Shown here: in pieces, positions 9,725-51,792 of the stretch
How the letters are laid out: each line of letters opens with the position of its first letter
How positions within the stretch are numbered: the stretch's first letter is position 1
From: Klebsormidium nitens
Lineage: Eukaryota; Plantae; Klebsormidiophyceae
Reading direction: 5' to 3'
Assembly (NCBI GenBank): GCA_000708835.1
Contig: DF236985.1
Location: 247,926 to 311,925 of the forward strand
Length of the DNA stretch: 64,000 bases
The notes under the pieces: generated by a model
Database searches by the model: none
Told to the model about the DNA's origin: nothing
What the model saw: only the letters and a program-made list of their open reading frames with translations
Program-made: the position numbers and the translations under genes

Positions 9725-11006
9725 AAACCGAATCGAGGGAACGAGGCTGCAGCTCGAATTGTAGTTCCATACTGGAGGCCGCACATGGCCGTTAGACGGT
9801 TCATTTGAGTTCTGTACAGCAATAGAAGTGATAATCAGCGAGGCTTGTACATTTCTGCAGAGGCGGTTGAGGAGTGGTACTCGAGCAGCGCCAAGAGCGG
9901 GCAGTCCAGCAAGGATATGGTCCGGTCGACTGTTTCAAAGCGATTGTGTACGGAAATCTTGAGATTGAAGACAACCAGGGCATCAGTCGGGATCCGCTTT
10001 ATAGAGCAAGCCTTCGCTGTTGCATTCCATGCAGCAAGAAAGCATCATCCGAGTGTATTTGTCGTGGCGACGATGGGGGCAACTCAAATGGGATTGGCCT
10101 TTTAAGGGAGCAAGAGGATTTGACAGTGGGTGCTTATACCCATCACCTTAAGCTATGTACCGTCGTAAGAAGCATCCATTTGAACTGCTTTGAAGATGGG
10201 GTTGCGTATTACGGTTGACGGTCTCGACTGCATGTGAGATTGGACTCAGTGCAGAGGTACCGTATGTTCCGTTCATTCAATTTGTGCAGTCCGGTCTGTG
10301 TGCATATACACATATTGGTATGGCCTTACAAAGAACATAATTCGCTACATATGAGCTACCCGGACAAACAAGCTACGAAAACCCTTTAACCGAAAGAAAC
10401 ACCCGCTACGCACCCTGACCACCAAACCATTGAACCCTACCCGTCTCCCTGGCGCCTACTCCGAGTGAAATGGCCCTGAAGTGAAACGGGAGTTACCAGA
10501 ATTGAATCAGCCCCTGTCGCGCCCCGCTTGCATGCAGTCATGGCACCGGATCGACGACTTGCTATTACTCTCGCGCCGTGCCAAAATTTGTTATAAGATG
10601 GCTGCATCCGATTCTCATGCAGCTAGCCTCAGGGCTATTTGAAGCCAGTCTATGGGGAAGTGCATTTCTGGCTCAATCTGTAGTAGTCATTCTCCAAAGT
10701 TAGACCCGTTCCGGCCGCGCGTGGGCCGGACGTACCTCCGAGGCTCTGCTATATGCAATTAGGCGACGTACAGAGCCATGGACCGTCCAGTTGATAAAGT
10801 TAAGACAGTGGATCTGAATCGACCTTAACAAGACCTAGACGGTGATTATAGCAGACCGCTTGTTCCAGGCATTAAGACCGCGTTTCAGTTCGAACTCAGA
10901 TTCGCAGTCCGCCTGACAGCATGCCATGTGGCATACCACCACCTATGGTAGTTGTTACGAATTGCGCATGCCGCTCGCAATGCAGAAGAGGGCGTCACGT
11001 GGCGAT

Positions 11007-39352: not shown

Positions 39353-40320
39353 ACTAGGACACACAGCTGATTATAATAGGGCACACAAGGGTTACAACCT
39401 ACCAGTATATTGAGAATATAATACCGTACTGGTAACTTTTGTTCCGAATTTGCTGGTACATAATGTTCCAAAACTTCAGAGGACCGGTCATATCTATTGA
39501 GCGACCCTCTAGCCAAGGCGCCGCTGTGGCGGTCGCCTAAACGAGCACGTTCTCAAATATATGCAGCGACAACCTATCTCATCTTCACAGGCTGTGTGTC
39601 GCCGGAGAGCCAAGTGGACGGGAAATTGAAAACGCCCGTGTCTTCTCCTGGTTTCGGCGACGACAATGTCAAGGGCGGGGCATCCAACCGGGAACGCCGT
39701 CTTGGGGTTTCATTTGGATTGCGCTAGTCAAAGAAGTGCACGGTGTCCAAGATACTAGCCGGGCCGGTCGATTCCCGACTACCTAAAACTTTTTGGGGTT
39801 GCTGATTCCTGAACCCCATTAGATGAATATTAATAGGTAATACCATAGGTGCTTGGTGAATTATGTACATAGGTAGCCCGGGCTAGCACCCTAAACTTGA
39901 AACTTCCCTAGGCATACCTATCGCTTATAGGTAGGTAGACCTACCGGTACGCATACCGTACCTGTGCCTATCATTGGCCAAGAATCACTATCGATCGAAT
40001 GATTAAATAGCACGGGGACAAGATCGACGGCTAACAACCGAAACCGGTCAACCGTGAGATGCTTGCCGTTACCACCAATCATGAATCAGCTGCTCAATTT
40101 AACTAGATCGAGAACTTGGAATTATCGTGCTTTACAAATTGGAAATTCAAATGGCTGGGCGGCCGCGCCCGCCCGGCCCGAATAAATGACTGCTCTAGGC
40201 TGCTGTGGCACTCTAGGCTACAGCATGAGCTGCATGACACTGCTTGCAGTTGCAATTTGCAAGCACTGTTCAGCAGATCATCATTAGGTAGCCTTTAGGA
40301 TAGAGCGACGACGGTTCCAA

Positions 40321-41125
40321 ATGGGTGGCGCGCAGAGCCGGCCCTCAGCTCCAATGCAGGCGGAGGCGGTTGGAGCGGGACAGAGCGAGCCACCTGTGCC
40401 GACTCTTTCGACCGAAAGCAAAGCTGCAGACAGCGCGGCTGACGGCATTGAGCGGAAAGTGCCGCGGAGGCGAAAGAACAACCCCGATCTTCGCCCCCAC
40501 CGCTGCAATGACAGGCTGGAGGATTGTATCCAGGCAAGCGCAACCGATCAATTGCTCGCTTGCTGCAGTAAGAACTTCATGATAGTTGCAGAACAGCGGT
40601 GAACAAGTTCCCCAAAATTAAGGCTCGCTCAGTTTCAATTGCACTGATTGCTTCCAGTCTGATTAGTTTGACTATTTGGGAGTGTTTGATTGAGGTGGGA
40701 TTGCGTTGCTGCAGGCGCTTTTTGAAGGGAATCCGCTTGAGACGATGAAGAAGCCTGTGCAGCTCTTTTGGCAGTGCATGAGGGCGAAGCCAGGGTGAGT
40801 GCGTTGCGCTTCTTCTGATGGCGTTGGAAGCGGTGGTGTGACTTGCTGTGCCCTGGGGTTTGTGCTTATCTCAATCGGTGTTCACAAGTCCTAATAGCAA
40901 CTCCTTAGAAAGGAGAATTGAGCATCAGCATTTGTCTTTCCAGCTCCCTCTTGCAACCCGGCTTGCCTGATGTTAGTCGAGGTCTTGTAAGTACCACTCT
41001 ATCAGACGGTCATGGCACGTTTTGATGTCGAGAAGGTTTCTGGCGGCTGATCACTCTGATTTGGTCGCGTCGGTTGCAGTGAAGAACCAACGGAGCCCTT
41101 CATCTACTACAAGCCCGATAAATAA
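40321..41125 (+). CDS. Small unknown protein, 112 aa, 3 exons, putative N-myristoylation
   Basis: Exons 40321-40533 (GC donor CAG|GCAAGC), 40715-40794 (GG|GTGAGT) and 41080-41125 (TAA) join in frame: MGGAQSRPSAP...RRRKNNPDLRPHRCNDRLEDCIQALFEGNPLETMKKPVQLFWQCMRAKPGEEPTEPFIYYKPDK. I do not recognise the family. Confidence 0.65.
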
Positions 41126-41183
41126 GGCCGCTGTGGGTGGGGCATAGTGGTAGTCTTTCGCAACCTGGGCCGGGCTCCTTAGC

Positions 41184-44100
41184 ATGAATCTTGCGTCCTC
41201 GCTTTTGAAGCGGATCCTGCCCCACCATGTCTCTTTGAAATTCAGTGCCTTGCCCCTTCCCAGCAGTAACACCGTCTGGCGACTCCATTATTCCACCAAC
41301 ACAAGCATAGTTTCCCTAGGCTCACGGTTCATCTCTAGAACAGTCTCTCAGCCCCCAAATAGACGCTTCTGCGCAAAGGGCCATCTTTCGCCAGCTTACC
41401 GGCCACGGACTGGCGACCCTCTGACTGCAAATGGAAGGTCCACAATTCTGCGCCCACTCTCTTGGCGCCACATGGCTGCGTCTGATCGCCTCACTATGAG
41501 GGGGTCTCTTCTTACACCATCCGCGCCAGCTCAGCACTCTGCCGCGCCCTCCTCTTGGCACCCTTCTTTGAGGTCTCCGGTGCTTTTGGCGCTCGGTTGC
41601 CCGCCAAGTCACAGGCTCATCCATGTTGCCGCCAAATGCTACGGCGATTTACGGAGTCTAGCCCCTCCTTGGCAGAGAGCAGCATCAGGATGGGGGACGT
41701 GCGGACCGCCAGCTTGGCCGCACTCTATTCGGACACTGCGTTCATCTGCGGGGACCGTGTTTGCCAAGGGCGGTGTCAAGAGGGCGCAGTCGACTTTGGC
41801 GCCATTGCGGAGGCCATCTCAGTTTGGCGCTCCCGGAACGTCAGGGTTGGCCTTCTGGCCCGCCCAGGAAGCCCTTACGGAGACATTTCCACGGGCTTCG
41901 GGGCGCCTACGGGCGACTCAGGGGTCCCCCGTGCTAGGCCCCCCGCTCGCAAACGAACCGCTCATCTCAATCGGCAGTGCTGAGGAGCCCCTGGGTATGC
42001 TGTCCACCGACGAGCCGTTTCTTGGGGACGTGCTAGACAGGGGAACGTCGCAGGAGACGCTTCTTTCGTCCCCAACTTGGAACCCTCCAGAGGACCGACC
42101 CCCCGAAGAGAAGATCATCCCTCACGAGTTCCCCCGGTTGGACGACCTGCGGCGCGCGCTGGCGGTTGAGGTGCAGGCGGGGTTTTGCAACTTACAGGGG
42201 ACGAAAATGAAGTTCAGCGTGTTTCTCGACTTCCAGCTGATGGACTGGGCGCGGATTACGATGAGCCAGAAGCACGCGCACGAGCTGCACGAGCTGCAGC
42301 GCAAGTACGTGCGCTGCAAGGCGGCGGGGCGGGAGAAGATCCTCGACCGGGTAAGCTTTTGGGTCTCGAGTCTCGGTGGGCCGAGTGCTTGCCTGAACTT
42401 CCGTCTGAAAGCTTGCACCTGCCCTTGCTGTTAGAAAAGTAAGGGTATAGCTGTCATTCTTGTCAATTACGGAAAAAACGGGTATAAAGGGGGCAGCCTC
42501 TCGTGGACAGCAGAGAGAGTTATGCAACCCGTCGCTTGATCAAGACCATATTTCTGCAACTTCGAAGGCTGCGGACTTCTCTTGTAAGGTGAAACGGGAA
42601 ACGTCTCTGTAGGCTGAACTCCAACAACTGGGAACGGCCAACCGTATTTCGTCAACTGACGAGAATGTTTGGCAATCATTCGAGGAACCGTATCAGTTGA
42701 AGTCAATTGGATGGTTTCGACCATTTGTCTCCCCTTCAACAGACCTATCTCAGGAAGTGGACGCTTGTCGCTGGTGGAGAAGAGGAAGAAGGATAGAAGA
42801 CCGAAAAAGCAAAAAGGGACCCCTGAGAATCAGACCGATCACTGCAAACTGGGTGCACGGTTTTCGAACTGACTAGGGAACTCCGGAGGACATATCTTGA
42901 GGATGCTTGGCACCGAGCTTGAAACAGACGACCCGCACTCTGTGTCCCTTGGCAGGTGGCAGAGTTTTTGGGCGAGCCGAACGTGCGCGTGCTGGCCGCC
43001 AAGGAGACGGGCAGCTACGACGCGTTGCAGCGCGCTCTCGCATACGAGTGGGCACACGGCTTCACCAACAGCCAGGGCAAGCAGTCCGACTTCGCCACAT
43101 TCCTGGCGGCGCGGCTAGAGGGGCATTCTTTGCACTTGCGGGCGTGTGAATATCCGCAGACAGGGGTGGAGGAGAGACAGGAGCTGTTGGAAGCGGTGAG
43201 GCGCTCTTTGCTTCATGTAGAAAGTGATCATCATGAGTGATTGCAGAACAACGAGTGTTTCCCTCCGGCCCTGATGAGATGGTTCTGAGGTTGTCGGGAA
43301 GGGGAGGTGGCCAGGCACACCAAACCCGGTCAGACTCCCCGCTCAAGAGACGTGCCTCTCGGGTGCGTTGCTAGACAGCCCGTCTTCCTGGCCAATCTTG
43401 TCAGAATCGGATTGGAAGGGTTTGCTCTGGTTCTTCGACGAGTGGTGACGGCACAGTTGCACGCTTGCTAGCGTCTGCACCTTGTCAATTTCCAAAGGGT
43501 CCTAACGGCATCTTTGTATCTGCAGGTAGCGCGCTCCCTCGGCGCGCCCAGCCTGCGCGTCCTGGTGGAACACGAGCTGGCTGCCATTGACGCCTCACCC
43601 GACCTCCCGACCCCGCTCGATGCGGCATCTCCTGGGAACCTTTTACAACCGGCTGCGGCAGAGGGGGCTCCGGCCGCCAAGGAAGCTTCAGAGGGGGCTC
43701 CGGCCGCCAAGGAAGCTTCTCCCTTGCACGACTCTGCCGCGTGCTTGGAAGAGCATTCGCAAATGGACGTAGGAGAAGGCCTTGCGGCCGACGATCGGAC
43801 AGCGGCGGTTCTCGGAACAGAGGCAGGAGTTGCGGAGCTCGAGTTGAGGGAGGAAATGCAGCAGGGATCTAGCAGCGAGAGTGTACATACGGGAAAGGGA
43901 GGTGGCCGAGTCGAAGCGGAAGAGTTCGGTGGGGTTGCGGCGCAAGAAGCGACGACGGAATTAGTGAAGGTACCGGGACCGCTTGCAGGTTTCCTGGAAG
44001 AGAGCGGGGCTGCTGTGAGAGGGCAAGTCGGAGAGAGCCCAAAGGGGGAAGCAAAGCCTGACGGGGACGGGAAAGGCGACGTCCGGAAAGACTACAGAGA

Positions 44101-47100
44101 GCGACTCCGGCGTTTGCAAGGTCGTTTGGCCGCCATGAAAGGAGCGTCGGAAGGACACGTGGCAGCCGCTGCGGAAGCCACGGTGCCGCCTGAAGAAGGG
44201 ACGGAGGTGCAGGGGGTGGAGGGGTATTTGGGAAGCGATCAGGAGATGAGCGCAGCGAGTGTTGGTTATCTTGAGAAAGAGCAGGGGGTGGAGTCTTTCG
44301 GCAAAAGTGTACCAGCCGGTGTAGGTTCGCAAGAATTGGGGGATCCGTTGAGGGCCCTTGAGGCGGAGCATGATCCGGGCGTAGAGAGCGGAGTCGCCGA
44401 GTCGAGGGGCGCAGTCGAACCCGAGGAAGCTACTCCAAGCACTGCGGAGGAGCCTGGGAGCGTTTCCTTTGAAAAGCTCCTCGAGACTCGGTCTCTGCCG
44501 AGCTCTGCGTCGGCCCTTGACCAGTTGTTGGACCAACGTGGAGTTGCGGAAGAAAGCGGGGGGATCGGGCGGGTTCTCGAGGGCGTGAAAGAGGCGCCCG
44601 AGATGTCGCCTCTGGAGCGGGCTTTGAGCCGACGGGAAGAGGCGGTTCCGGTCCCGGAATTCCACTTTGAAGAGGAGAACTCGGGCGGCGACAAGGCGGA
44701 GAGTTGGTTGGAAGACCGCAGCGAATGGGCGATCAGCCCCGTGAGAAAAGCGGAGCGGAATGCAGAGCTCTTTGAAGAATCGGAAATCAATGAAAGCACG
44801 GGAGACGGGCTGTCTAAAACTCTCAAGGGGGAACCGTACGCAGAGGCGGCGCCGCTGTCCGAAAGCGTCGTGGCGGGGGCCCCGAAAAAGCCGCCGCCTA
44901 TGAAGTTGTTCCCACGAAGGTCGATTCTCGGGGCGCAGAGTTTGGCGGAGCTCCCCTCGAACGACACGTGGGAGGACCGTCAGGTCGGTACAAGGGAGCC
45001 GTGGTACAACCGGCCGTTGAGCGCGTTCACACGGTACGCCGAGAAGGTGCCGCTGGGGTACGACCCGGCCGGTGTGAATTGGGCCGAGGTGCTGCCGAAG
45101 TTGGCCGCGGTTGTCGCGGAGGATACTAACGAGGCCGGGACCTCAGAAGAGATTCCGGCCGACGAGCTCGAAGCGGACTTTGAGCCAGAAGAGGTTCCGA
45201 GCGGCTCTGGGGGGATGATCCTGAGTGGAGGAGACGGGGGGGAAGATGGGAACGAGGGGTGGGGGGGAAGTTGGGCGGAAGAACGGAACCGGCCAGGGGA
45301 GACGAGCGGTCGGACGGAGGCGGACGAGGGTCGGGGCGCCCGTGTGAATGGGCCCCTTATTTCGGAAGAAGACTGGAAAGTGCTCGAGGCGGAGCCGGGA
45401 ATCGTAAAGCGGAGCGACACCCTGCTGGCGAGCATACGGCAGTTACGGGACAAGGAGAAGGGGAAGAAGAAAGAGGGCAGGCCCGCTGGGGCGGAAAGCG
45501 AATCCTTAGACTCAGTTCTAGAGTCGGGCGGAGAGAAAGAAGGGGAAAAAGCGAAGAAGGGCGCAAAGCGCGCTCTGGATCCGGCGTGGAAGCTAGACAC
45601 GCCGATGGAGATGGTGAAGTGCCTCACTCCGGGCCAGCGGAAGAAGCTGATCGAGGCGGAGTTTCTGACGGCGCGGCAGCTGTTGCAGCACTACCCGAAG
45701 GCGATGATCGACAGTGCGCAACTAGAGGAGGGCCTCCCGAGGGAGGGCTCGCACTTCACCGGCATCGGCACAGTGCTCTCCTCCAGGCAAGGCCGGCTTG
45801 CATTCTACTTAGGCATGCTTCTTTTGGCGATGGTCGTTCATATCTTTTTCTCCGTGTCATTTCTCTCTTTCTTATTCTCTCCCTTTGGTGGGATTGTTTC
45901 TTCAAAGATGAGCTAACGTACACCTATTTAAGCGTGCTCGCTTTCCAGGCTAAGATTTCACTTGGTGATGGGTTGCCTGCAGGAGTCCTTGCAATGATCA
46001 TGCGCGCGCAAACCGCTTCAAGGAAGACTTTCCAGCCTCGATTTGAACGCGCTAAAAAGTTGGCGTTTCTTCTCCGTACTTACATCGTCTCCGGAAGAGC
46101 AAGAAGTTCCATGTAAACGAGAGCGTTGCCAGTAGACACTAACACATCCAGGCTTGGCTTCTTTGTGCAGGGGGGTGAAAACTGCTGGTAGCCGGGGGTT
46201 CATCGAAGTGATGATCCAGCACGAGCAGCCGGCCGGGGGGGGACCTCCGCTGATCATGAAGAGCCTGAGATGGCTGGCGTTCGCACCCTACAGAACGCTC
46301 GCCTTCATCGCCAATAAGACGCCCAAAGGCACGGAGGTCATTGTCAAAGGAACGGTAAGCCACGGCCTTCCGAGATACGGGGAGGGCTTTTGGAGCGAAT
46401 CCGCAGGAATGTGGATTGCTGCAGAAGGTTGGACAATTGAAGTGGATGCCAGCCCTCGGTCGCTCATCTTAATGCAAGCATATGATTTTGTGCCGCATCA
46501 AAGCTGGCGTCTCGTTACAGCGCATGATGTACGTCCCTTGGGCCTAGGGCACCATCAAATGACTCCCATATTTTCTAAGGATTATTGTTACTTCCCTTTG
46601 CGAATCACGAATTGGTCCCAAGAGCTTATTCCCACACATACTCCCGTCTGGTCGGTTGCAGGTGAAGCACACGTCAAATCCGACTGTGATTGAGATCCTG
46701 AAGCCAGAAATCCAGCTCAAGAGCGAAGCGGCAGGCTTGATTGGCGGCGTTGGCGGGAGCGGCATGGCGGCGGGCACCGGCGAGGAGCTGGACGCACCCC
46801 TGCCGGTGTATGCACAAAAAGGGGGCCTGCTGCCGCGAACCATACAAGAGTGCATCTACAAGTGAGCGGATCGCACTGATTATATATTGCGGAGTTGGTT
46901 GAGGACGAAAAAATGGGACCGAAGCTTGCGGCCAGACGTTGAGGAATGTTGCAGGAGTGCTGCGAACACAGTGTGCAGTGGAGAAACACCAGAGAATCGT
47001 GTCCTTCTTAATTGCGCGTTTGTCCGTGCTGGTATCTAGAACTTTCAGGGGCAGACTTGTCCCCCACTAGAGAAGTCGGGTTATTCGGGTTTCGAAGCGG

Positions 47101-50100
47101 GCTCTTGAGGGGCCGTCAAACGAGGCGCGATCAATCACTTCAATCAAGGCAATGACTAATGATGAGACAGTACAAAAACGAGTCTGACTAGCCAGGGCGC
47201 GTTAGCGTGGGTGCGGAGCGCCTAAGCCTTTCGTCTGCATTCTCGGTCAGGCCGAGGGCTTGTTGTTTCCTGACCAGAAAACCTACTGACAACGAGCTCC
47301 CTTGTCGTGCGCAGGGTCCTGGCGGCGCTTCCGGACGACCTGGACCCGCTGCCGGCGGACGTCCGGCGGCAGTGGGGCCTGCTGGAGCTGCGGCAGGCGC
47401 TGCGCGCGCTGCACGCGCCCAAGACGGGGGAGGAGGCGGAGGAGGCCAGGAGGCGCCTGGTCTTCGACGAGTTCTTCTACCACCAGGTGACCGGGGCGGG
47501 GGGACCAGTTTCGCTGTTGTTGTGCAAGGTCCTTTCTTTCGTAGAGTTAACACAGTGGGTCAGTGAATTGGTAATAATGCTAGAGGTGGCCTAGTGAAAG
47601 ACTGGAGGTGCGTCTAAGCTCGGAGTGTCCGTCGGTTCTCAGGCATAGGGGCGTGGTTTGGTGGTACTGCACACTCACAAGCGGACAACAAGCTGACCAA
47701 TCAAGCTTCCCTCAAAGCAGTATTCTAGCAACGGCAATCGACCAGATAGACCTTGCTAGACTGCGTTTTTCCTTCAAACCACGAGTTCGCAGTCAGCAAG
47801 TCTATCGGGAGCCTGATTTTTCTTCCTCGTCGTCCTTGCAGCTGGGCATGTTGCAGCAACGGCAAGACCTGGAGGATGGGCGGGAGCGGGCCGCCCCCGT
47901 TCCGCCGGAAAAGTGGTCGCCGCTGGTCCAAGAAATGCTGGCGGCTCTGCCGTACAAATTGACGGGGTCGCAGGAGGGCGCGTGCGCCGAGATTGTTGGG
48001 GACCTGCGCCGCAAAGTGCCCATGAGCAGGCTGCTCCAGGTAACGCCGGGCGTTTTGAGCGGGGATTCTTGTGTTGATGCATTTTGGGCGGCACCTGATG
48101 GTGACGTCAGCTTGAGCTGCCTTTCCAACGTATCAACGGCTTGCTTGTTCACAGGGTTTGATTCCCAAATGACCTGAAGGTTCGGATGCTAGGGCTAGTA
48201 CGGCCGTCTGCTGCAGATCTATTGAAGCCCGTATCGACAATAGATTGAAAACCTGTGGGTCGCAAACGACACTGAGCGGCTCTTCACCCCTTGATTGCAG
48301 TCAACAATTGCAAAACAAATGCTCTCTGCAATTGTGAAGTACCGACTCGGCGTGTGTAACCAAGCCTCGTTGGCGAGTCGTCAATCGTAAAACCACTCTT
48401 GCACACAATTGGCCAAGATTCGCATGCCGCTTCCTTCAAGACGTAATGCCTTTCGCATTGGACCAATCTCTGTTCGCTTTGTGTAACCAAGCCTTGTTGG
48501 CCGGACGTCAACATAAAGCCACTTTTGCACAATTGGACCAAGCTTACAAGACGGAATGGCCTTTCGCAGTGATATCAATCTCTGTTCGCTTTTCAGGGCG
48601 ACGTTGGGTGCGGCAAGACGGTGGTCGCCCTTCTGGCGCTGCTGGAAGTGGTCGCTGCTGGCTACCAGGGCGCCATCATGGCGCCAACCGTGTTCCTCGC
48701 CGACCAGCACTTCCGTAAGTTTTCCGCGTGGCTCGACGCGCTGGGCCCCGCTCACCGGCCCACGCTCACGCTACTCAAGGGCTCCATCACCCGGAAGGAG
48801 CAACGCGACCGGCGACAGGGCCTCCTGGACGGGACCACCCAGCTGGCGGTCGGGACGCACGCGCTTCTCTCGGAAGGCGTCGAGTTTGCGAAACTAGGGC
48901 TCGCGGTGATTGACGAGCAGCACCGGTTCGGCGTCGATCAGCGCGCGAAGCTGCACCAGAAGGGGCTGCGGAAGGTCGGGCCGGGGGGGGAGGAGGACGG
49001 GGAGGAGGACCCCCCCGCTGCGGAGCGGGAGCTGCCGTCGCCGCATGTGATGGCCATGACCGCGACGCCGATCCCGCGCACGCTCGCGCTCGCGCTTCAT
49101 GGCGAGATGGATATCACAGTGGTACGGCCGCCGTTTATTGGTCTATAAGAGTTTTAGTAAGCTCACGTTATATGAAGCTAACCTGCCTGGGACGGGTGGG
49201 CTTAGTGAGGTAATTTAGGGTGGGCAGGGGTGCGGAGCGGGTGGATCTTTGGCTTAGGTTTGGGTTTTCGGTGTTAGTTTACTTTAAATTGAGCTACCAT
49301 GAGTACTGTTGGAGAATTATTCTCCGTCTCTGCACGAGACTTTTGCTAGGTTCCTGGGACTGCTAAGAGTGATACTCTTTTTTCAGGGTCGCTTGGTTTA
49401 GGCGTGCTCTTTTCGAGGCATGCTGTGTGGAGACTGTCCAACGGCCGCTGGATCACGTGCCTTTACCTGGTCTTGAAGTCGCTCTCGAATCTACGCACTG
49501 TTTGCCGAGTGCTGGTTAACAAAATGGTCGCCGCCAAGTGAAGCAGCTACCTTTTCAAAGTGCGACCAATGATAAGCTTTGCAGACTGTGGAAGAAGTGA
49601 AACAGATTAAATGAAGCTCAACTTCGTGCTTGTTCAGCTTTCGAGTCATCCCCACTCTCTCGTTTACTGTATTGCAGATCGACGAGTTGCCCCCGGGCCG
49701 GCCCGAGATCACGACCCACGTGGTTTTCGACACGGAGGCAGGGCGGCGGAAGGCGTACGAGAGCGTGCGGGAGGAGCTGGCAGGGGGCGGCCGAGCCTTC
49801 ATCGTGTTCCCGCTCATCGACGAGTCGGTGGCTAGGGTACGGCAGCTTGAAAGTTCGCTTCAAATCTTTCAATACATCAAATTTAAATCCCTGCTTACGG
49901 GATAGGAGGAACTCCCATATTGCGGTTGCGAAAGCTTGACTGCCGGGATTTGAGGAGCTTTTGAAAGACACTCTTTTGGCAGGCCAAGTCAAAGCTTTCT
50001 CCGTTGATTATCCTTGACTTGTAGCACACAAGACCCTGATCAGATCCTACGTCAGTGGCGTGGTCTGGATGCATTCTCGCAATATGGTGTACCGTCTGCT

Positions 50101-51792
50101 ATTCGCCTTCCATCACCGACGTTTACACAGCTACGTCTTTCCTCGTCCTCGCTCCGTCTTAGGCTAACTGAGTAAAGCCGGGACCACGCGTTCATGGGCA
50201 TTTGTCATGTTGCAGTCAAACTTCTGTAGATCTTGCTTCGCTTGTTCTGTACAGGAGTGGCGCTCCGCCGTGGCCGAGTACGAGGCCCTCCAGTCGGGTT
50301 TCCTCGCCGGCTTCCCGTGCGGCCTGGTCCACGGGCGCATGAACCCCGTCGAAAAGGAGGAGGCCATGGCGCGCTTCAAGGCGGGGGAGACACGTGTCCT
50401 CGTCTCCACGACCGTGGTCGAGGTCGGGATCGACATCCCGGAGGCAACGGTAATGGTGGTGGAGCACGCGGAGCGGCACGGCACCGCGCAGCTGCACCAG
50501 CTGCGGGGGCGAGTTGGGCGCGGAACGCGCGCGGCCACGTGCATACTGCTGACCAGCAGGTGCGCGGGGATTGTGGATGTTTGCGGAGGGGCCTTTTTCC
50601 AAAGATTGCGTGTTTTGTTTGTGGGTTTGAAGTTTTAGAGGTGGGCTCCTGACGGTTTCCGTCTTCACTTTTCGACGAAGTGCTGTCTCCGCCTTTCCTC
50701 CTTCGTGCCTTTCTTCTCGCCTCCTCCCACTTTTTTTCCTGGCCCCTCATATCTTCACTCTTTCTCGTTTCGGAAAATGGTTTGAATGGTCAAGCAACCC
50801 TTTTCCTTTGTTCTTTGTTCTGGCAGAGCAAATCGGAATGTGGACCTTGAACGTTTTGCTCGTAGTCTCTGCTTCTGTGAACCCATCGCCGATTGGTCAT
50901 AATCTCTCCGTGCCGTGCAGCCGCGGGGCATTGCCCCGGTTGCGGGCCCTGGAGCGGAGCCGCGACGGATTCCGGTTGGCGGAGCTGGACCTGCAGCTGC
51001 GCGGGCCGGGGCACCTGCTCGGGAAGAAGCAGTCGGGGCACCTCCCCGAGTTTGCCATTGCGCGCCTCGACACAGACGAAGGGATCCTCAATGACGCCAG
51101 GACCGCGGCAGAGGTGAGCACGTGCCTGAGAACAAGTCCACATGTCCTTTTCTTATAGTGCTGCTTCGAGACTGCTTTGAGGTGCTGCGATAGCAGAGTT
51201 CGTGAAAGGCCGTAGTTGTCGTCCCTCTTGCTTGCTGCAGTCGGGCCTGTGATTTGGTGAAGCTGGTTGGCTTTTTCCGTGTTTTACGAGCGATTCCATT
51301 TGTCGACAGACTGTATCTTGTCGTGCTGTACGTTCGACGGACGTTACAGCGCGAGCAGCTGAGTACTGACAATAGTGCACCGGACACTACTGGTCCTTTT
51401 TGCGCTAATCACGAAATGGGTATCCCTTCAGTCGAAAGTTTCACGGAGACTTCCGTCCGGGCAGTGCGGCCCTGCTTCTAACATCCTTTCGCTATTGTGG
51501 CAGTACCCTTGCGGATGCTTACCTCTGAAAATAAAGTGCTGGCTGATTGAATTGTGACTTACATTATGGCTAGAGAGGGAAGCGTCCCCTGCTGCAAACC
51601 CAGCGAGCCAATCCAGCTTTGGTGCATCGCTGATTGTCAATACCTGCCGCTTCCTATTGAACTTGGCATTGGTAATCAATACCTTCTTTTATTGTCCAGG
51701 AACTGTTGCGGGACCACCCAAGGCTGCACGACTTGCCAGCAATTCGGATGGAGTTGAGCGTGAAACAGCCAGCGGTCAGCTTAGGACAGTGA
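41184..51792 (+). CDS. RECG: Organellar ATP-dependent DNA helicase RecG (cyanobacterial/plant type), ~1898 aa
   Basis: 12 exons totalling 5697 nt: 41184-42350, 42956-43195, 43526-45786 (GC donor), 46171-46354, 46662-46861, 47315-47486, 47842-48039, 48597-49121, 49678-49836, 50255-50559, 50921-51113, 51700-51792. Motifs: [84 protein letters not shown]. The N-terminus is S/R/L-rich like a transit peptide, and the plant-like C-terminus reads MELSVKQP. Confidence 0.93.
43659..43718 (+). repeat. Perfect in-frame 30-nt tandem duplication in RecG exon 3 ([10 protein letters not shown] x2)
   Basis: CAGAGGGGGCTCCGGCCGCCAAGGAAGCTT at 43659-43688 and 43689-43718. Confidence 0.92.
48353..48591. repeat. 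Diverged ~120-nt tandem duplication at the 3' end of a RecG intron
   Basis: Both units (48353-48479, 48480-48591) begin TGTGTAACCAAGCCTyGTTGGC, share CCACTyTTGCAC, AATTGG.CCAAG, CAAGACG.AATG and CCTTTCGCA, and end CAATCTCTGTTCGCTT. Confidence 0.85.

What the first reader, a model, noticed from the sequence alone, without database searches (positions are those of the whole stretch)
40321..41190. Small spliced gene abuts RecG; an alternative acceptor would fuse them in frame
The 112-aa gene stops at 41125, only 58 nt before the RecG ATG (41184) on the same strand, leaving little room for a terminator plus promoter. Its exon 2 ends in phase 2 (GG|GTGAGT, 40794). The acceptor TGCAG at 41079 gives the short protein. 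A second AG right before the RecG start (GGCTCCTTAG|C ATG, 41181-41182) would give GG|C-ATG, an in-frame fusion of the myristoylation-motif protein to RecG that buries the transit peptide. This suggests a bicistronic or uORF-type transcript, or a splice switch controlling RecG amount and location.
Basis: partly seen in the sequence, partly recalled or inferred. Interest (0 to 1): 0.7.

Follow-up and report, generated by a model that had tools for sequence, protein, structure and literature searches.

The report
Small protein and RecG share one mRNA
In this alga a conserved 112-residue protein and the organelle DNA-repair helicase RecG are encoded 58 bases apart, apparently on one spliced messenger RNA, and three liverworts keep the same gene pair, so this looks like a new, old example of a two-protein mRNA in the plant lineage rather than a splice-made fusion.

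Summary

In four RNA data sets from four studies, one spliced contig per run reaches from about 40235 to 43688. It crosses the stop, the spacer and the second ATG. Only the 40794>41080 junction appears; the proposed 41183 acceptor does not.

ORF1 is a real gene. It belongs to a family of small eukaryotic proteins with no Pfam entry (185 clusters; motif PHRCNDRxED...FEG...C...PGxEPxxP). In 56 conserved codons pN/pS is about 0.07. ORF2 reads in frame into the RecG core.

The ORF1-then-RecG order recurs in a metagenomic relative (45-nt spacer) and in Marchantia, Riccia and Calypogeia. It was not found in two mosses, three vascular plants or a prasinophyte-like alga.

Best reading: a conserved bicistronic unit of a kind already known in green algae and plants (such as CDC26-TTM3), with a pairing I found in no paper. 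How RecG is translated past five upstream AUGs is unknown. Contigs cannot exclude overlapping separate transcripts. The in-frame fusion is unsupported.

The scan earlier reported another bicistron (microprotein-CFAP20) in this genome, which those notes call Klebsormidium nitens.

The parts
40235..40320 (+). 5' leader of the transcript. RNA contigs begin at 40235-40278, and nothing is laid on 40000-40234.
   Evidence: tables 2 and 8. Contigs cannot fix a true TSS.
40321..40533 (+). ORF1 exon 1 (71 codons). It has an MGGAQS start, and the conserved motif begins at PHRCNDRLEDCIQ.
40534..40714 (+). Intron 1, 181 nt, GC-AG (CAG|GCAAGC ... CTGCAG|G). The GC donor is conserved in the relative L001.
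40715..40794 (+). ORF1 exon 2 (ALFEGNPL...CMRAKP plus GG), ending in phase 2.
40795..41079 (+). Intron 2, 285 nt, GT-AG. Its position after KPG (phase 2) is shared with liverworts.
41080..41125 (+). ORF1 exon 3 coding part (G-EEPTEPFIYYKPDK) with the stop TAA at 41123-41125.
41126..41183 (+). Inter-ORF spacer, 58 nt, without any ATG. The same RNA contig covers it.
41177..41189 (+). 13-nt block CCTTAGCATGAAT around the RecG start. It is identical in L001 although synonymous sites are saturated.
41184..42350 (+). ORF2 (RecG) exon 1, 389 codons. The first 77 residues have no acidic residue, as in a transit peptide. From residue 148 on it aligns with the relative at 37% identity.
42351..42955 (+). 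Intron 3, 605 nt, GT-AG.
42956..43195 (+). ORF2 exon 2, 80 codons, in frame.
43196..43525 (+). Intron 4, 330 nt, GT-AG.
43526..45787 (+). ORF2 exon 3, 754 codons. Its last 60 or so residues are the start of the RecG core (LTPGQRKKL...LLQHYP...).
45788..46171 (+). Intron 5. The loose end of the contigs at 45787 continues at 46172, in frame.
47608..51158 (+). Exons of the RecG core (region before the helicase, DEAD and Helicase_C lobes, C-terminal part). These are ORF pieces, and the exon borders were not mapped.

Best explanation
The locus is a conserved two-gene transcription unit, that is, a bicistronic mRNA.

Shown:
- A transcript starting near 40235 carries a 112-codon ORF in three exons. 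This ORF encodes a real, widely conserved small protein, modelled in a liverwort homologue as a helical hairpin, with two invariant cysteines across the family. The algal version starts with MGGAQS.
- After a 58-nt spacer without AUG, the same RNA contig carries the ORF of a very long organelle-type RecG helicase. That ORF has about 1160 residues of N-terminal extension before the RecG core.
- The gene order is kept in relatives.

Inferred:
- ORF1 is translated by ordinary cap-dependent scanning.
- RecG is translated at a low level by ribosomes that either scan past the upstream AUGs or resume scanning after ORF1 terminates. The conserved sequence around the RecG AUG would help start there.
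- Because ORF1 stops upstream of many exon junctions, the mRNA may also be subject to nonsense-mediated decay, as reported for CDC26-TTM3.
For: 1. RNA continuity. In each of four runs from four studies, one contig with four introns precisely removed runs from 40235-40278 to 43688. It is unbroken from 41079 to 42349, so it crosses the ORF1 stop, the spacer and ATG 41184. In run X1, low-depth contigs that lie in introns 2 and 3 have similar depth (3.5 and 3.2, against 96 for the main contig). That fits one pre-mRNA.

2. Space. 58 nt leaves no room for a poly(A) site plus a promoter.

3. ORF1 is a real gene.
- A profile search finds 185 clusters of small eukaryotic proteins with invariant H, R, C, R, D, C, G, E and P.
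- Between the window and L001, pN is 0.07 and pS about 1.0 over 56 codons.
- Homologues stand alone in Physcomitrium, Sphagnum, Theobroma and a prasinophyte-like alga.

4. The pairing is conserved.
- L001 has the same three exons, the same GC donor, a 45-nt spacer and an identical CCTTAGCATGAAT at the start, followed by RecG exons.
- In Riccia, Marchantia and Calypogeia the small gene is followed on the same strand by RecG, 334, 352 and 375 nt after its stop.
- Each liverwort spacer holds a candidate GT-AG intron.

5. Precedent. Hundreds of bicistronic loci are known in chlorophytes, with median inter-ORF distances of 212-260 nt (PMC7896298). CDC26-TTM3 is conserved from land plants to green algae (PMC11892635).
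Against: - Only assembled short-read contigs were available. They cannot show a single molecule, a 5' end, a 3' end or relative levels, and the tool itself warns that a contig across two genes shows no single transcript.
- Five AUGs precede the RecG AUG in the mRNA: 40321, 40354, 40508, 40745 and 40778.
- The ORF1 start context is only moderately weak here (C at -3, G at +4). In L001, Marchantia and Riccia it is good (purine at -3, G at +4).
- The weak first start and the scarcity of upstream AUGs reported for chlorophyte bicistrons (PMC11892635) are therefore not clearly present.
- Reinitiation after a 112-codon ORF is generally held to be inefficient.
- No translation data were available for either ORF.
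Confidence: 0.6

Rival explanations
1. There are two separate but overlapping transcription units. ORF1 mRNAs would be polyadenylated a little beyond 41125. RecG mRNAs would start from their own promoter inside exon 3 or intron 2 of the small gene. The assembler would then merge them because they overlap by at least one 31-base word, the word length this tool counts as bridging.
For: - Contigs cannot separate this case from a single molecule.
- An A-rich AATAA-like stretch overlaps the ORF1 stop (ATAAATAAG).
- Five upstream AUGs make the bicistronic RNA a poor template for RecG.
Against: - It needs a promoter, a TSS and a poly(A) site packed and overlapping within about 100 nt.
- No contig end or loose end falls between 41080 and 41300 in any of the four runs (tables 7 and 8).
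- The tight same-strand pairing is kept in two Klebsormidium-type algae and three liverworts. That is unexpected for unrelated neighbours.
- Candidate introns inside the liverwort spacers suggest transcription through the spacer.
Confidence: 0.2
2. ORF1 acts here mainly as a long regulatory upstream ORF. Its translation, and perhaps its peptide, would gate how many ribosomes reach RecG. The protein product would be secondary.
For: - Position in the RecG leader, the short AUG-free spacer, and the conserved sequence around the RecG start.
- Any translated upstream ORF lowers downstream initiation (PMC11892635).
Against: - The family exists as stand-alone genes in mosses, seed plants and other algae, with the same invariant residues. 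The protein itself is therefore under selection, unlike conserved-peptide uORFs, which are tied to one main ORF.
- 112 codons in three exons is far beyond typical uORFs.
- This reading can hold alongside the best explanation rather than replace it.
Confidence: 0.1
3. Exon 2 (donor at 40794) would sometimes join an acceptor at 41182 and so make an N-myristoylated ORF1-RecG fusion that buries the transit peptide.
For: - The frame works (GG|C ATG) in the window and also in L001.
- The block CCTTAGC before the ATG is identical in both, despite saturated neutral divergence.
- Contigs drop rare isoforms, so a minor form is not excluded.
Against: - No joint to 41183 appears in four runs.
- TTAG|C has a poor pyrimidine tract and differs from the GCAG| acceptors of the four introns checked in this transcript.
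- The fusion removes the invariant G-EP..P end of the domain.
- In Marchantia and Riccia no AG precedes the RecG ATG, and exon 2 joined to the spacer acceptor reads out of frame into a stop (my own reading).
Confidence: 0.05

Closest known systems
Bicistronic/polycistronic nuclear mRNAs of green algae (Gallaher et al. 2021, PMC7896298; Dupuis et al. 2025, PMC11892635), e.g. REX1S-REX1B and TOM22-SDHAF3
   Same: - Two unrelated conserved ORFs lie on one strand a few tens of nucleotides apart.
- The upstream ORF is small.
- The collinear pair is kept across distant species.
- One of the described pairs (REX1) also concerns DNA repair.
   Different: - Those loci were defined with full-length Iso-Seq reads in chlorophytes; here only short-read contigs exist.
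- According to earlier scan notes the alga is a streptophyte (Klebsormidium).
- The downstream ORF is huge (about 1160 residues before the RecG core alone, against a median of about 290 residues).
- The upstream region is not depleted of AUGs, and the ORF1 start context is not consistently weak.
- 'RecG' does not occur in the main text of PMC7896298.
CDC26-TTM3 bicistron of land plants and green algae (Lorenzo-Orts et al. 2019, as cited in PMC11892635)
   Same: - A small conserved protein sits upstream of a larger enzyme on one transcript.
- The arrangement is conserved over very long evolutionary distances in the green lineage.
- The first stop lies upstream of exon junctions, so interplay with nonsense-mediated decay is plausible.
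   Different: - The proteins are different.
- The pairing here was found only in two Klebsormidium-type algae and three liverworts, and not in the mosses and vascular plants sampled.
- No experimental evidence of co-translation exists.
Conserved-peptide upstream ORFs (CPuORFs) of plants (e.g. PMC2075485)
   Same: A conserved coding sequence lies in the leader of a main ORF and is likely to reduce its translation.
   Different: ORF1 is 112 codons long with two introns. Its family also occurs as free-standing genes unlinked to RecG in many eukaryotes.
Plant organellar RECG/RECG1 (Odahara et al. 2015, PMC4358946)
   Same: The downstream ORF has all the RecG core pieces and an N-terminus free of acidic residues, as in a transit peptide.
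   Different: - It has about 1160 extra N-terminal residues, partly conserved in L001.
- Liverwort RecG proteins are 1160-1205 residues in all.
- In Physcomitrium, where RECG was studied, the small gene is not next to it.
CHCH / twin-Cx9C small mitochondrial proteins (Ndufs5, Cmc1, COX19, NDUFB7)
   Same: - Similar size and a helical-hairpin model.
- They are the nearest named clusters in the language-model search, after two unnamed Streptophyta clusters (scores 0.83-0.86).
- CHCH-type chains are among the weak structural matches (Z about 4).
   Different: - Only two invariant cysteines, 29 residues apart, and no twin Cx9C.
- No Pfam hit.
- All structural matches are in the range expected for any helical hairpin.

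Membership tests
Green-lineage bicistronic mRNA locus | Two non-overlapping protein-coding ORFs on the same strand with a short inter-ORF distance | tested here: met
   Stop at 41125, ATG at 41184, 58 nt between them.
Green-lineage bicistronic mRNA locus | Single full-length transcripts carrying both ORFs, with few or no monocistronic forms | tested here: inconclusive
   One spliced contig per run spans both ORFs in four studies. Contigs are not molecules, and no long reads or end mapping were available.
Green-lineage bicistronic mRNA locus | Both ORFs encode conserved proteins | tested here: met
   The ORF1 family has 185 clusters, and pN/pS is about 0.07. ORF2 is RecG.
Green-lineage bicistronic mRNA locus | Collinear pair conserved in other species | tested here: met
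   L001, Riccia, Marchantia and Calypogeia keep it. It was not found in Physcomitrium, Sphagnum, Theobroma, Amborella or Diphasiastrum within the 10-kb flanks fetched.
Green-lineage bicistronic mRNA locus | Weak start context of ORF1 and few AUGs upstream of ORF2 (leaky-scanning signature) | tested here: not met
   Four further AUGs lie between the two starts. The ORF1 context has C at -3 and G at +4 here, but purine at -3 and G at +4 in L001, Marchantia and Riccia. No species-specific Kozak model was built.
Green-lineage bicistronic mRNA locus | Both ORFs translated from the shared mRNA | not testable with these tools
   No ribosome profiling or proteomics was at hand.
Conserved-peptide uORF (CPuORF) | Peptide conserved only as an upstream ORF of orthologous main ORFs | tested here: not met
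   Homologues are free-standing genes in mosses, seed plants and a prasinophyte-like alga.
RecG helicase (TIGR00643 / PRK10917) | Match to the RecG model over the N-terminal region, both helicase lobes and the C-terminal domain | tested here: met
   Five ORF pieces between 47608 and 51158 match consecutive parts of the recG models (positions 194-629 of TIGR00643), each better than mfd. The solved RecG 1gm5 matches at E 1e-29. The whole-protein cut-off could not be tested because the joined protein was not searched.
Twin-Cx9C (CHCH) proteins | Two Cx9C motifs in a helix-turn-helix | tested here: not met
   Only two invariant Cys (C50 and C80 in Marchantia numbering). No CHCH, Cmc1 or Ndufs5 Pfam hit.
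N-myristoylated proteins | N-terminal Met-Gly with Ser or Thr at position 6 | tested here: met
   MGGAQS in the window and in L001. The same pattern occurs in 6 of 149 family representatives. The modification itself is not testable here.

The most novel reading that the evidence does not exclude
The small HRCNDR-motif protein and RecG form an ancient functional pair. On this reading they were kept on one mRNA since before Klebsormidium-type algae and land plants split, because the small protein works with or controls RecG in mitochondria or plastids. It might be a disulfide-stapled or membrane-anchored partner that sets where or when the helicase acts on organelle DNA. The pair would then be a true eukaryotic 'operon' for organelle genome maintenance, and it would give a first function to a family of small proteins found across eukaryotes and still uncharacterised.
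Probability: 0.15. Interest if true: 0.8.

Novelty: new member of a known kind. Interest (0 to 1): 0.55.

Why it matters
Two-protein mRNAs are well documented in chlorophyte algae. In the streptophyte line leading to land plants, I know of only CDC26-TTM3 as a described case.

A second deeply conserved pair would show that this way of expressing genes is old and maintained in that lineage. The pair here is present in Klebsormidium-type algae and in both liverwort classes sampled.

It also ties RecG, a helicase that keeps plastid and mitochondrial genomes stable (PMC4358946), to an uncharacterised family of small proteins without a Pfam entry. The link is testable in Marchantia, which is genetically tractable.

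On the practical side, gene finders miss or mis-join such upstream ORFs. Many database models of this family go wrong right after the conserved KPG intron site.

Tried and rejected
**Family and fold searches on ORF1**
- Pfam on ORF1 exons 1 and 2, on the intronless homologue and on ten family members gave no family. My first attempt on L008 was in the wrong frame and is void.
- The word-based protein search with exon 1 found only one relative. The profile search was needed to see the family.
- Foldseek against the PDB gave nothing below E 4.7. The wide VIA-align search gave only Z of 4.3 or less, generic helical hairpins. The CHCH reading is therefore rejected as membership and kept only as a weak lead.

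**Database names**
- Three plant members carry the UniRef name 'Hexokinase'. In Theobroma the neighbours listed around the small gene carry no hexokinase-type family, so I treat the name as spurious.

**Literature**
- Searches for RecG/RECG1 with bicistronic or uORF, and for Klebsormidium with bicistronic, gave nothing relevant.
- A scan-notes search for 'RecG' found nothing.

**Steps not done**
- The joined (spliced) ORF1 and RecG proteins were not sent to any search or folding tool. Exons were searched one by one by reference. The fold was predicted for the Marchantia homologue P0189 with a 60-sequence alignment instead.
- Exons were joined only in memory inside local scripts, to count AUGs, check frames and count substitutions.
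Full report
**Observation.**
- An ATG at 40321 opens a 112-codon ORF in three exons: 40321-40533, 40715-40794 and 41080-41125.
- Exon 2 ends in phase 2 at GG|GTGAGT, and exon 3 follows TTGCAG.
- The stop TAA ends at 41125, and the next ATG on the strand is at 41184, 58 nt later.
- An AG at 41181-82, followed by a single C, would keep the frame if it were used as an acceptor.

**RNA evidence.** The run search returned about twenty data sets of one organism that hold 68-79% of the sampled words of 40200-42500. That is close to the share left once the two introns, about a fifth of the stretch, are removed. I laid the contigs of four runs from four studies on 40000-45999.
- In each run one contig starts at 40235-40278 and ends at 43688, with four precise joints.
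- The first joint skips 181 nt, and its placement freedom includes GC..AG at 40534-40714. The others skip 285 nt (40795-41079), 605 nt (42351-42955) and 330 nt (43196-43525), all GT..AG.
- The contig is unbroken from 41079 to 42349, so it crosses the ORF1 stop, the spacer and ATG 41184. No joint to 41183 appears.
- Nothing is laid on 40000-40234.
- In run X1, low-depth contigs lie in intron 2 (depth 3.5) and intron 3 (depth 3.2), against 96 for the main contig. That fits one pre-mRNA.
- Limits: these are assembled contigs. They show neither single molecules nor ends nor levels, and they drop rare isoforms.

**The downstream ORF is RecG.**
- From 41184 the frame stays open for at least 1223 codons through the spliced exons up to 45787.
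- The loose end of the contigs at 45787 continues at 46172, in frame.
- The last 60 or so residues of the exon ending at 45787 already align, at high identity, with the start of the RecG core in a relative.
- ORF pieces between 47608 and 51158 match consecutive parts of the NCBIfam recG models, each better than mfd. They also match the solved RecG 1gm5 (E 1e-29).
- This RecG therefore carries about 1160 residues before the core.
- Its first 77 residues have no acidic residue, as transit peptides do. Plant RECG acts in plastids and mitochondria (PMC4358946).

**ORF1 is a real gene of an uncharacterised family.**
- Exon-by-exon Pfam scans were blank.
- A word search with exon 1 found one metagenomic relative. 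A pattern scan with exon 2 found intronless homologues in GC-rich, prasinophyte-like contigs.
- A profile of the roughly 74-residue core, built only from referenced pieces, found 185 clusters of small proteins with E of 1e-3 or better.
- They come from angiosperms, a conifer, a lycophyte, ferns, mosses, liverworts, green algae and other eukaryotes.
- Invariant residues are H, R, C, R, D ... C ... G, E, P. None of the members scanned has a Pfam family.
- Between the window and the relative L001, 56 conserved codons show pN 0.07 with pS about 1.0. That is strong selection on the protein against saturated neutral change.
- An AlphaFold model of the Marchantia homologue is confident (pLDDT above 90) over residues 50-100, with helices at 50-62, 66-69 and 71-82 forming a hairpin.
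- Structure searches gave only generic hairpin matches. The language-model search placed it nearest to two unnamed plant clusters and then to Ndufs5/Cmc1/COX19-type proteins. The twin-Cx9C signature is absent, so its function stays open.
- The MGGAQS start fits the N-myristoylation pattern, is identical in L001, and recurs in a minority of family members (6 of 149 representatives).

**Conservation of the pairing.**
- L001, a metagenomic alga (49% identity to exon 1 of ORF1), has the same three exons, the same GC donor and the same phase-2 intron after KPG.
- Its stop is followed by a 45-nt spacer and then an ATG inside an identical 13-nt block, CCTTAGCATGAAT. A long ORF and RecG exons follow.
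- In the liverworts Riccia sorocarpa, Marchantia polymorpha (Mp_3g22380) and Calypogeia fissa, the small gene is followed on the same strand by the annotated RecG gene. The gaps after the stop are 334, 352 and 375 nt.
- Each of these spacers holds a candidate GT-AG intron followed at once by a tiny ORF of 2-7 codons. I could not check these with RNA.
- No RecG follows the small gene within the 10-kb flanks fetched in Physcomitrium, Sphagnum, Theobroma, Amborella, Diphasiastrum or the prasinophyte-like alga.
- By rough reasoning, the chance that one given gene has RecG as its same-strand downstream neighbour is about one in tens of thousands. Finding it in two lineages this far apart points to inheritance and selection.

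**Interpretation.** The best reading is a bicistronic unit of the kind described in chlorophytes (PMC7896298) and for CDC26-TTM3 in plants and algae (PMC11892635). The spacer is too short for a terminator plus a promoter, the RNA is continuous, both ORFs are conserved proteins, and the order is conserved.

The open point is how RecG gets translated.
- Five AUGs precede its start.
- The ORF1 start context is only moderately weak here and good in the relatives.
- The leaky-scanning signature reported for chlorophyte bicistrons is therefore not evident. Reinitiation, or a low yield that is tolerated for a repair enzyme, are alternatives.
- For this reason, and because contigs cannot exclude overlapping separate transcripts, I put the bicistronic reading at 0.6 and overlapping units at 0.2.
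- A mainly regulatory uORF role gets 0.1 and can hold alongside the main reading.

- It is not seen in any run.
- Its acceptor, TTAG|C, is unlike the GCAG| acceptors of the four introns checked in this transcript.
- It would cut off the invariant end of the ORF1 domain.
- It has no counterpart in Marchantia or Riccia: no AG precedes the RecG ATG there, and the spacer acceptor is out of frame.
- The identical CCTTAGC before the ATG in L001 is the one observation that keeps the idea alive. Selection on the start context explains it equally well.

**Novelty and context.** I found no paper linking RecG/RECG1 to a bicistron or uORF. 'RecG' does not occur in the main text of the chlorophyte survey.

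Earlier notes of this scan name the genome as Klebsormidium nitens and report another bicistron there (microprotein-CFAP20), also shared with bryophytes. I did not verify the species name or that case. They make it more plausible that such units are a regular feature of this lineage.

I class the finding as a new member of a known kind.

The joined spliced proteins were never sent to a search or folding tool. Exons were searched separately by reference. Joins were made only in memory in local scripts for counting.

Noticed in passing
L008:9113-10186 (also L002-L009): In the prasinophyte-like metagenome contigs the intronless homologue of ORF1 (ATG at 9728) lies in the same open frame as the C-terminal half of a glycine-cleavage H-like protein. 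No stop separates them over 358 codons. This could be a fusion, an unrecognised intron, or another tight gene pair.
   Followed up: no
L017:10861-11127, L011:10744-10972, L020:11312-11623: In all three liverworts the spacer between the small gene and RecG holds a candidate GT-AG intron. Right after its acceptor sits a tiny ORF (MALG*, MM*, MVKGLSL*), 15-25 nt before the RecG ATG. This may matter for reinitiation. No RNA check was possible.
   Followed up: partly
window:41184-45590: This RecG has about 1160 residues before the RecG core, whereas liverwort RecG proteins are 1160-1205 residues in all. The extension is partly conserved in L001: 37% identity from residue 148 of exon 1, and 47% over the last 440 residues of exon 3. 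It has no Pfam hit.
   Followed up: partly
window:40534-40535; L001:10214-10215: Intron 1 of the small gene uses a GC donor (CAG|GCAAGC). It is confirmed by spliced contigs and conserved in the relative. The liverwort orthologues use GT at the same site.
   Followed up: yes
proteins P0037, P0040, P0041, P0045, P0046, P0048, P0049, P0051, P0052, P0054, P0185, P0187: Many database models of this family in flowering plants diverge right after the conserved KPG, which is the phase-2 intron site shared with this alga. This suggests retained introns or alternative acceptors. Amborella has several 'isoforms' that differ only there. A maize entry is named as isoform X3 of a DNAJ-domain gene. Three entries carry the UniRef name 'Hexokinase'.
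   Followed up: partly
L015:3-2369: On a spliced or intronless Logan contig of an unknown organism, a family member (1995-2261) lies 397 nt downstream of a 531-residue ORF on the same strand. That ORF's C-terminal half looked NAD(P)-binding to me by eye; I did not test it. Another ATG follows 72 nt after the family member's stop, at the contig end. This may be another multi-ORF transcript with different partners.
   Followed up: no
window:43660-43718: In three of the four runs the transcript contig breaks at 43688/43690, with a separate 59-nt contig bridging the place. This suggests a local repeat or variant inside RecG exon 3.
   Followed up: no
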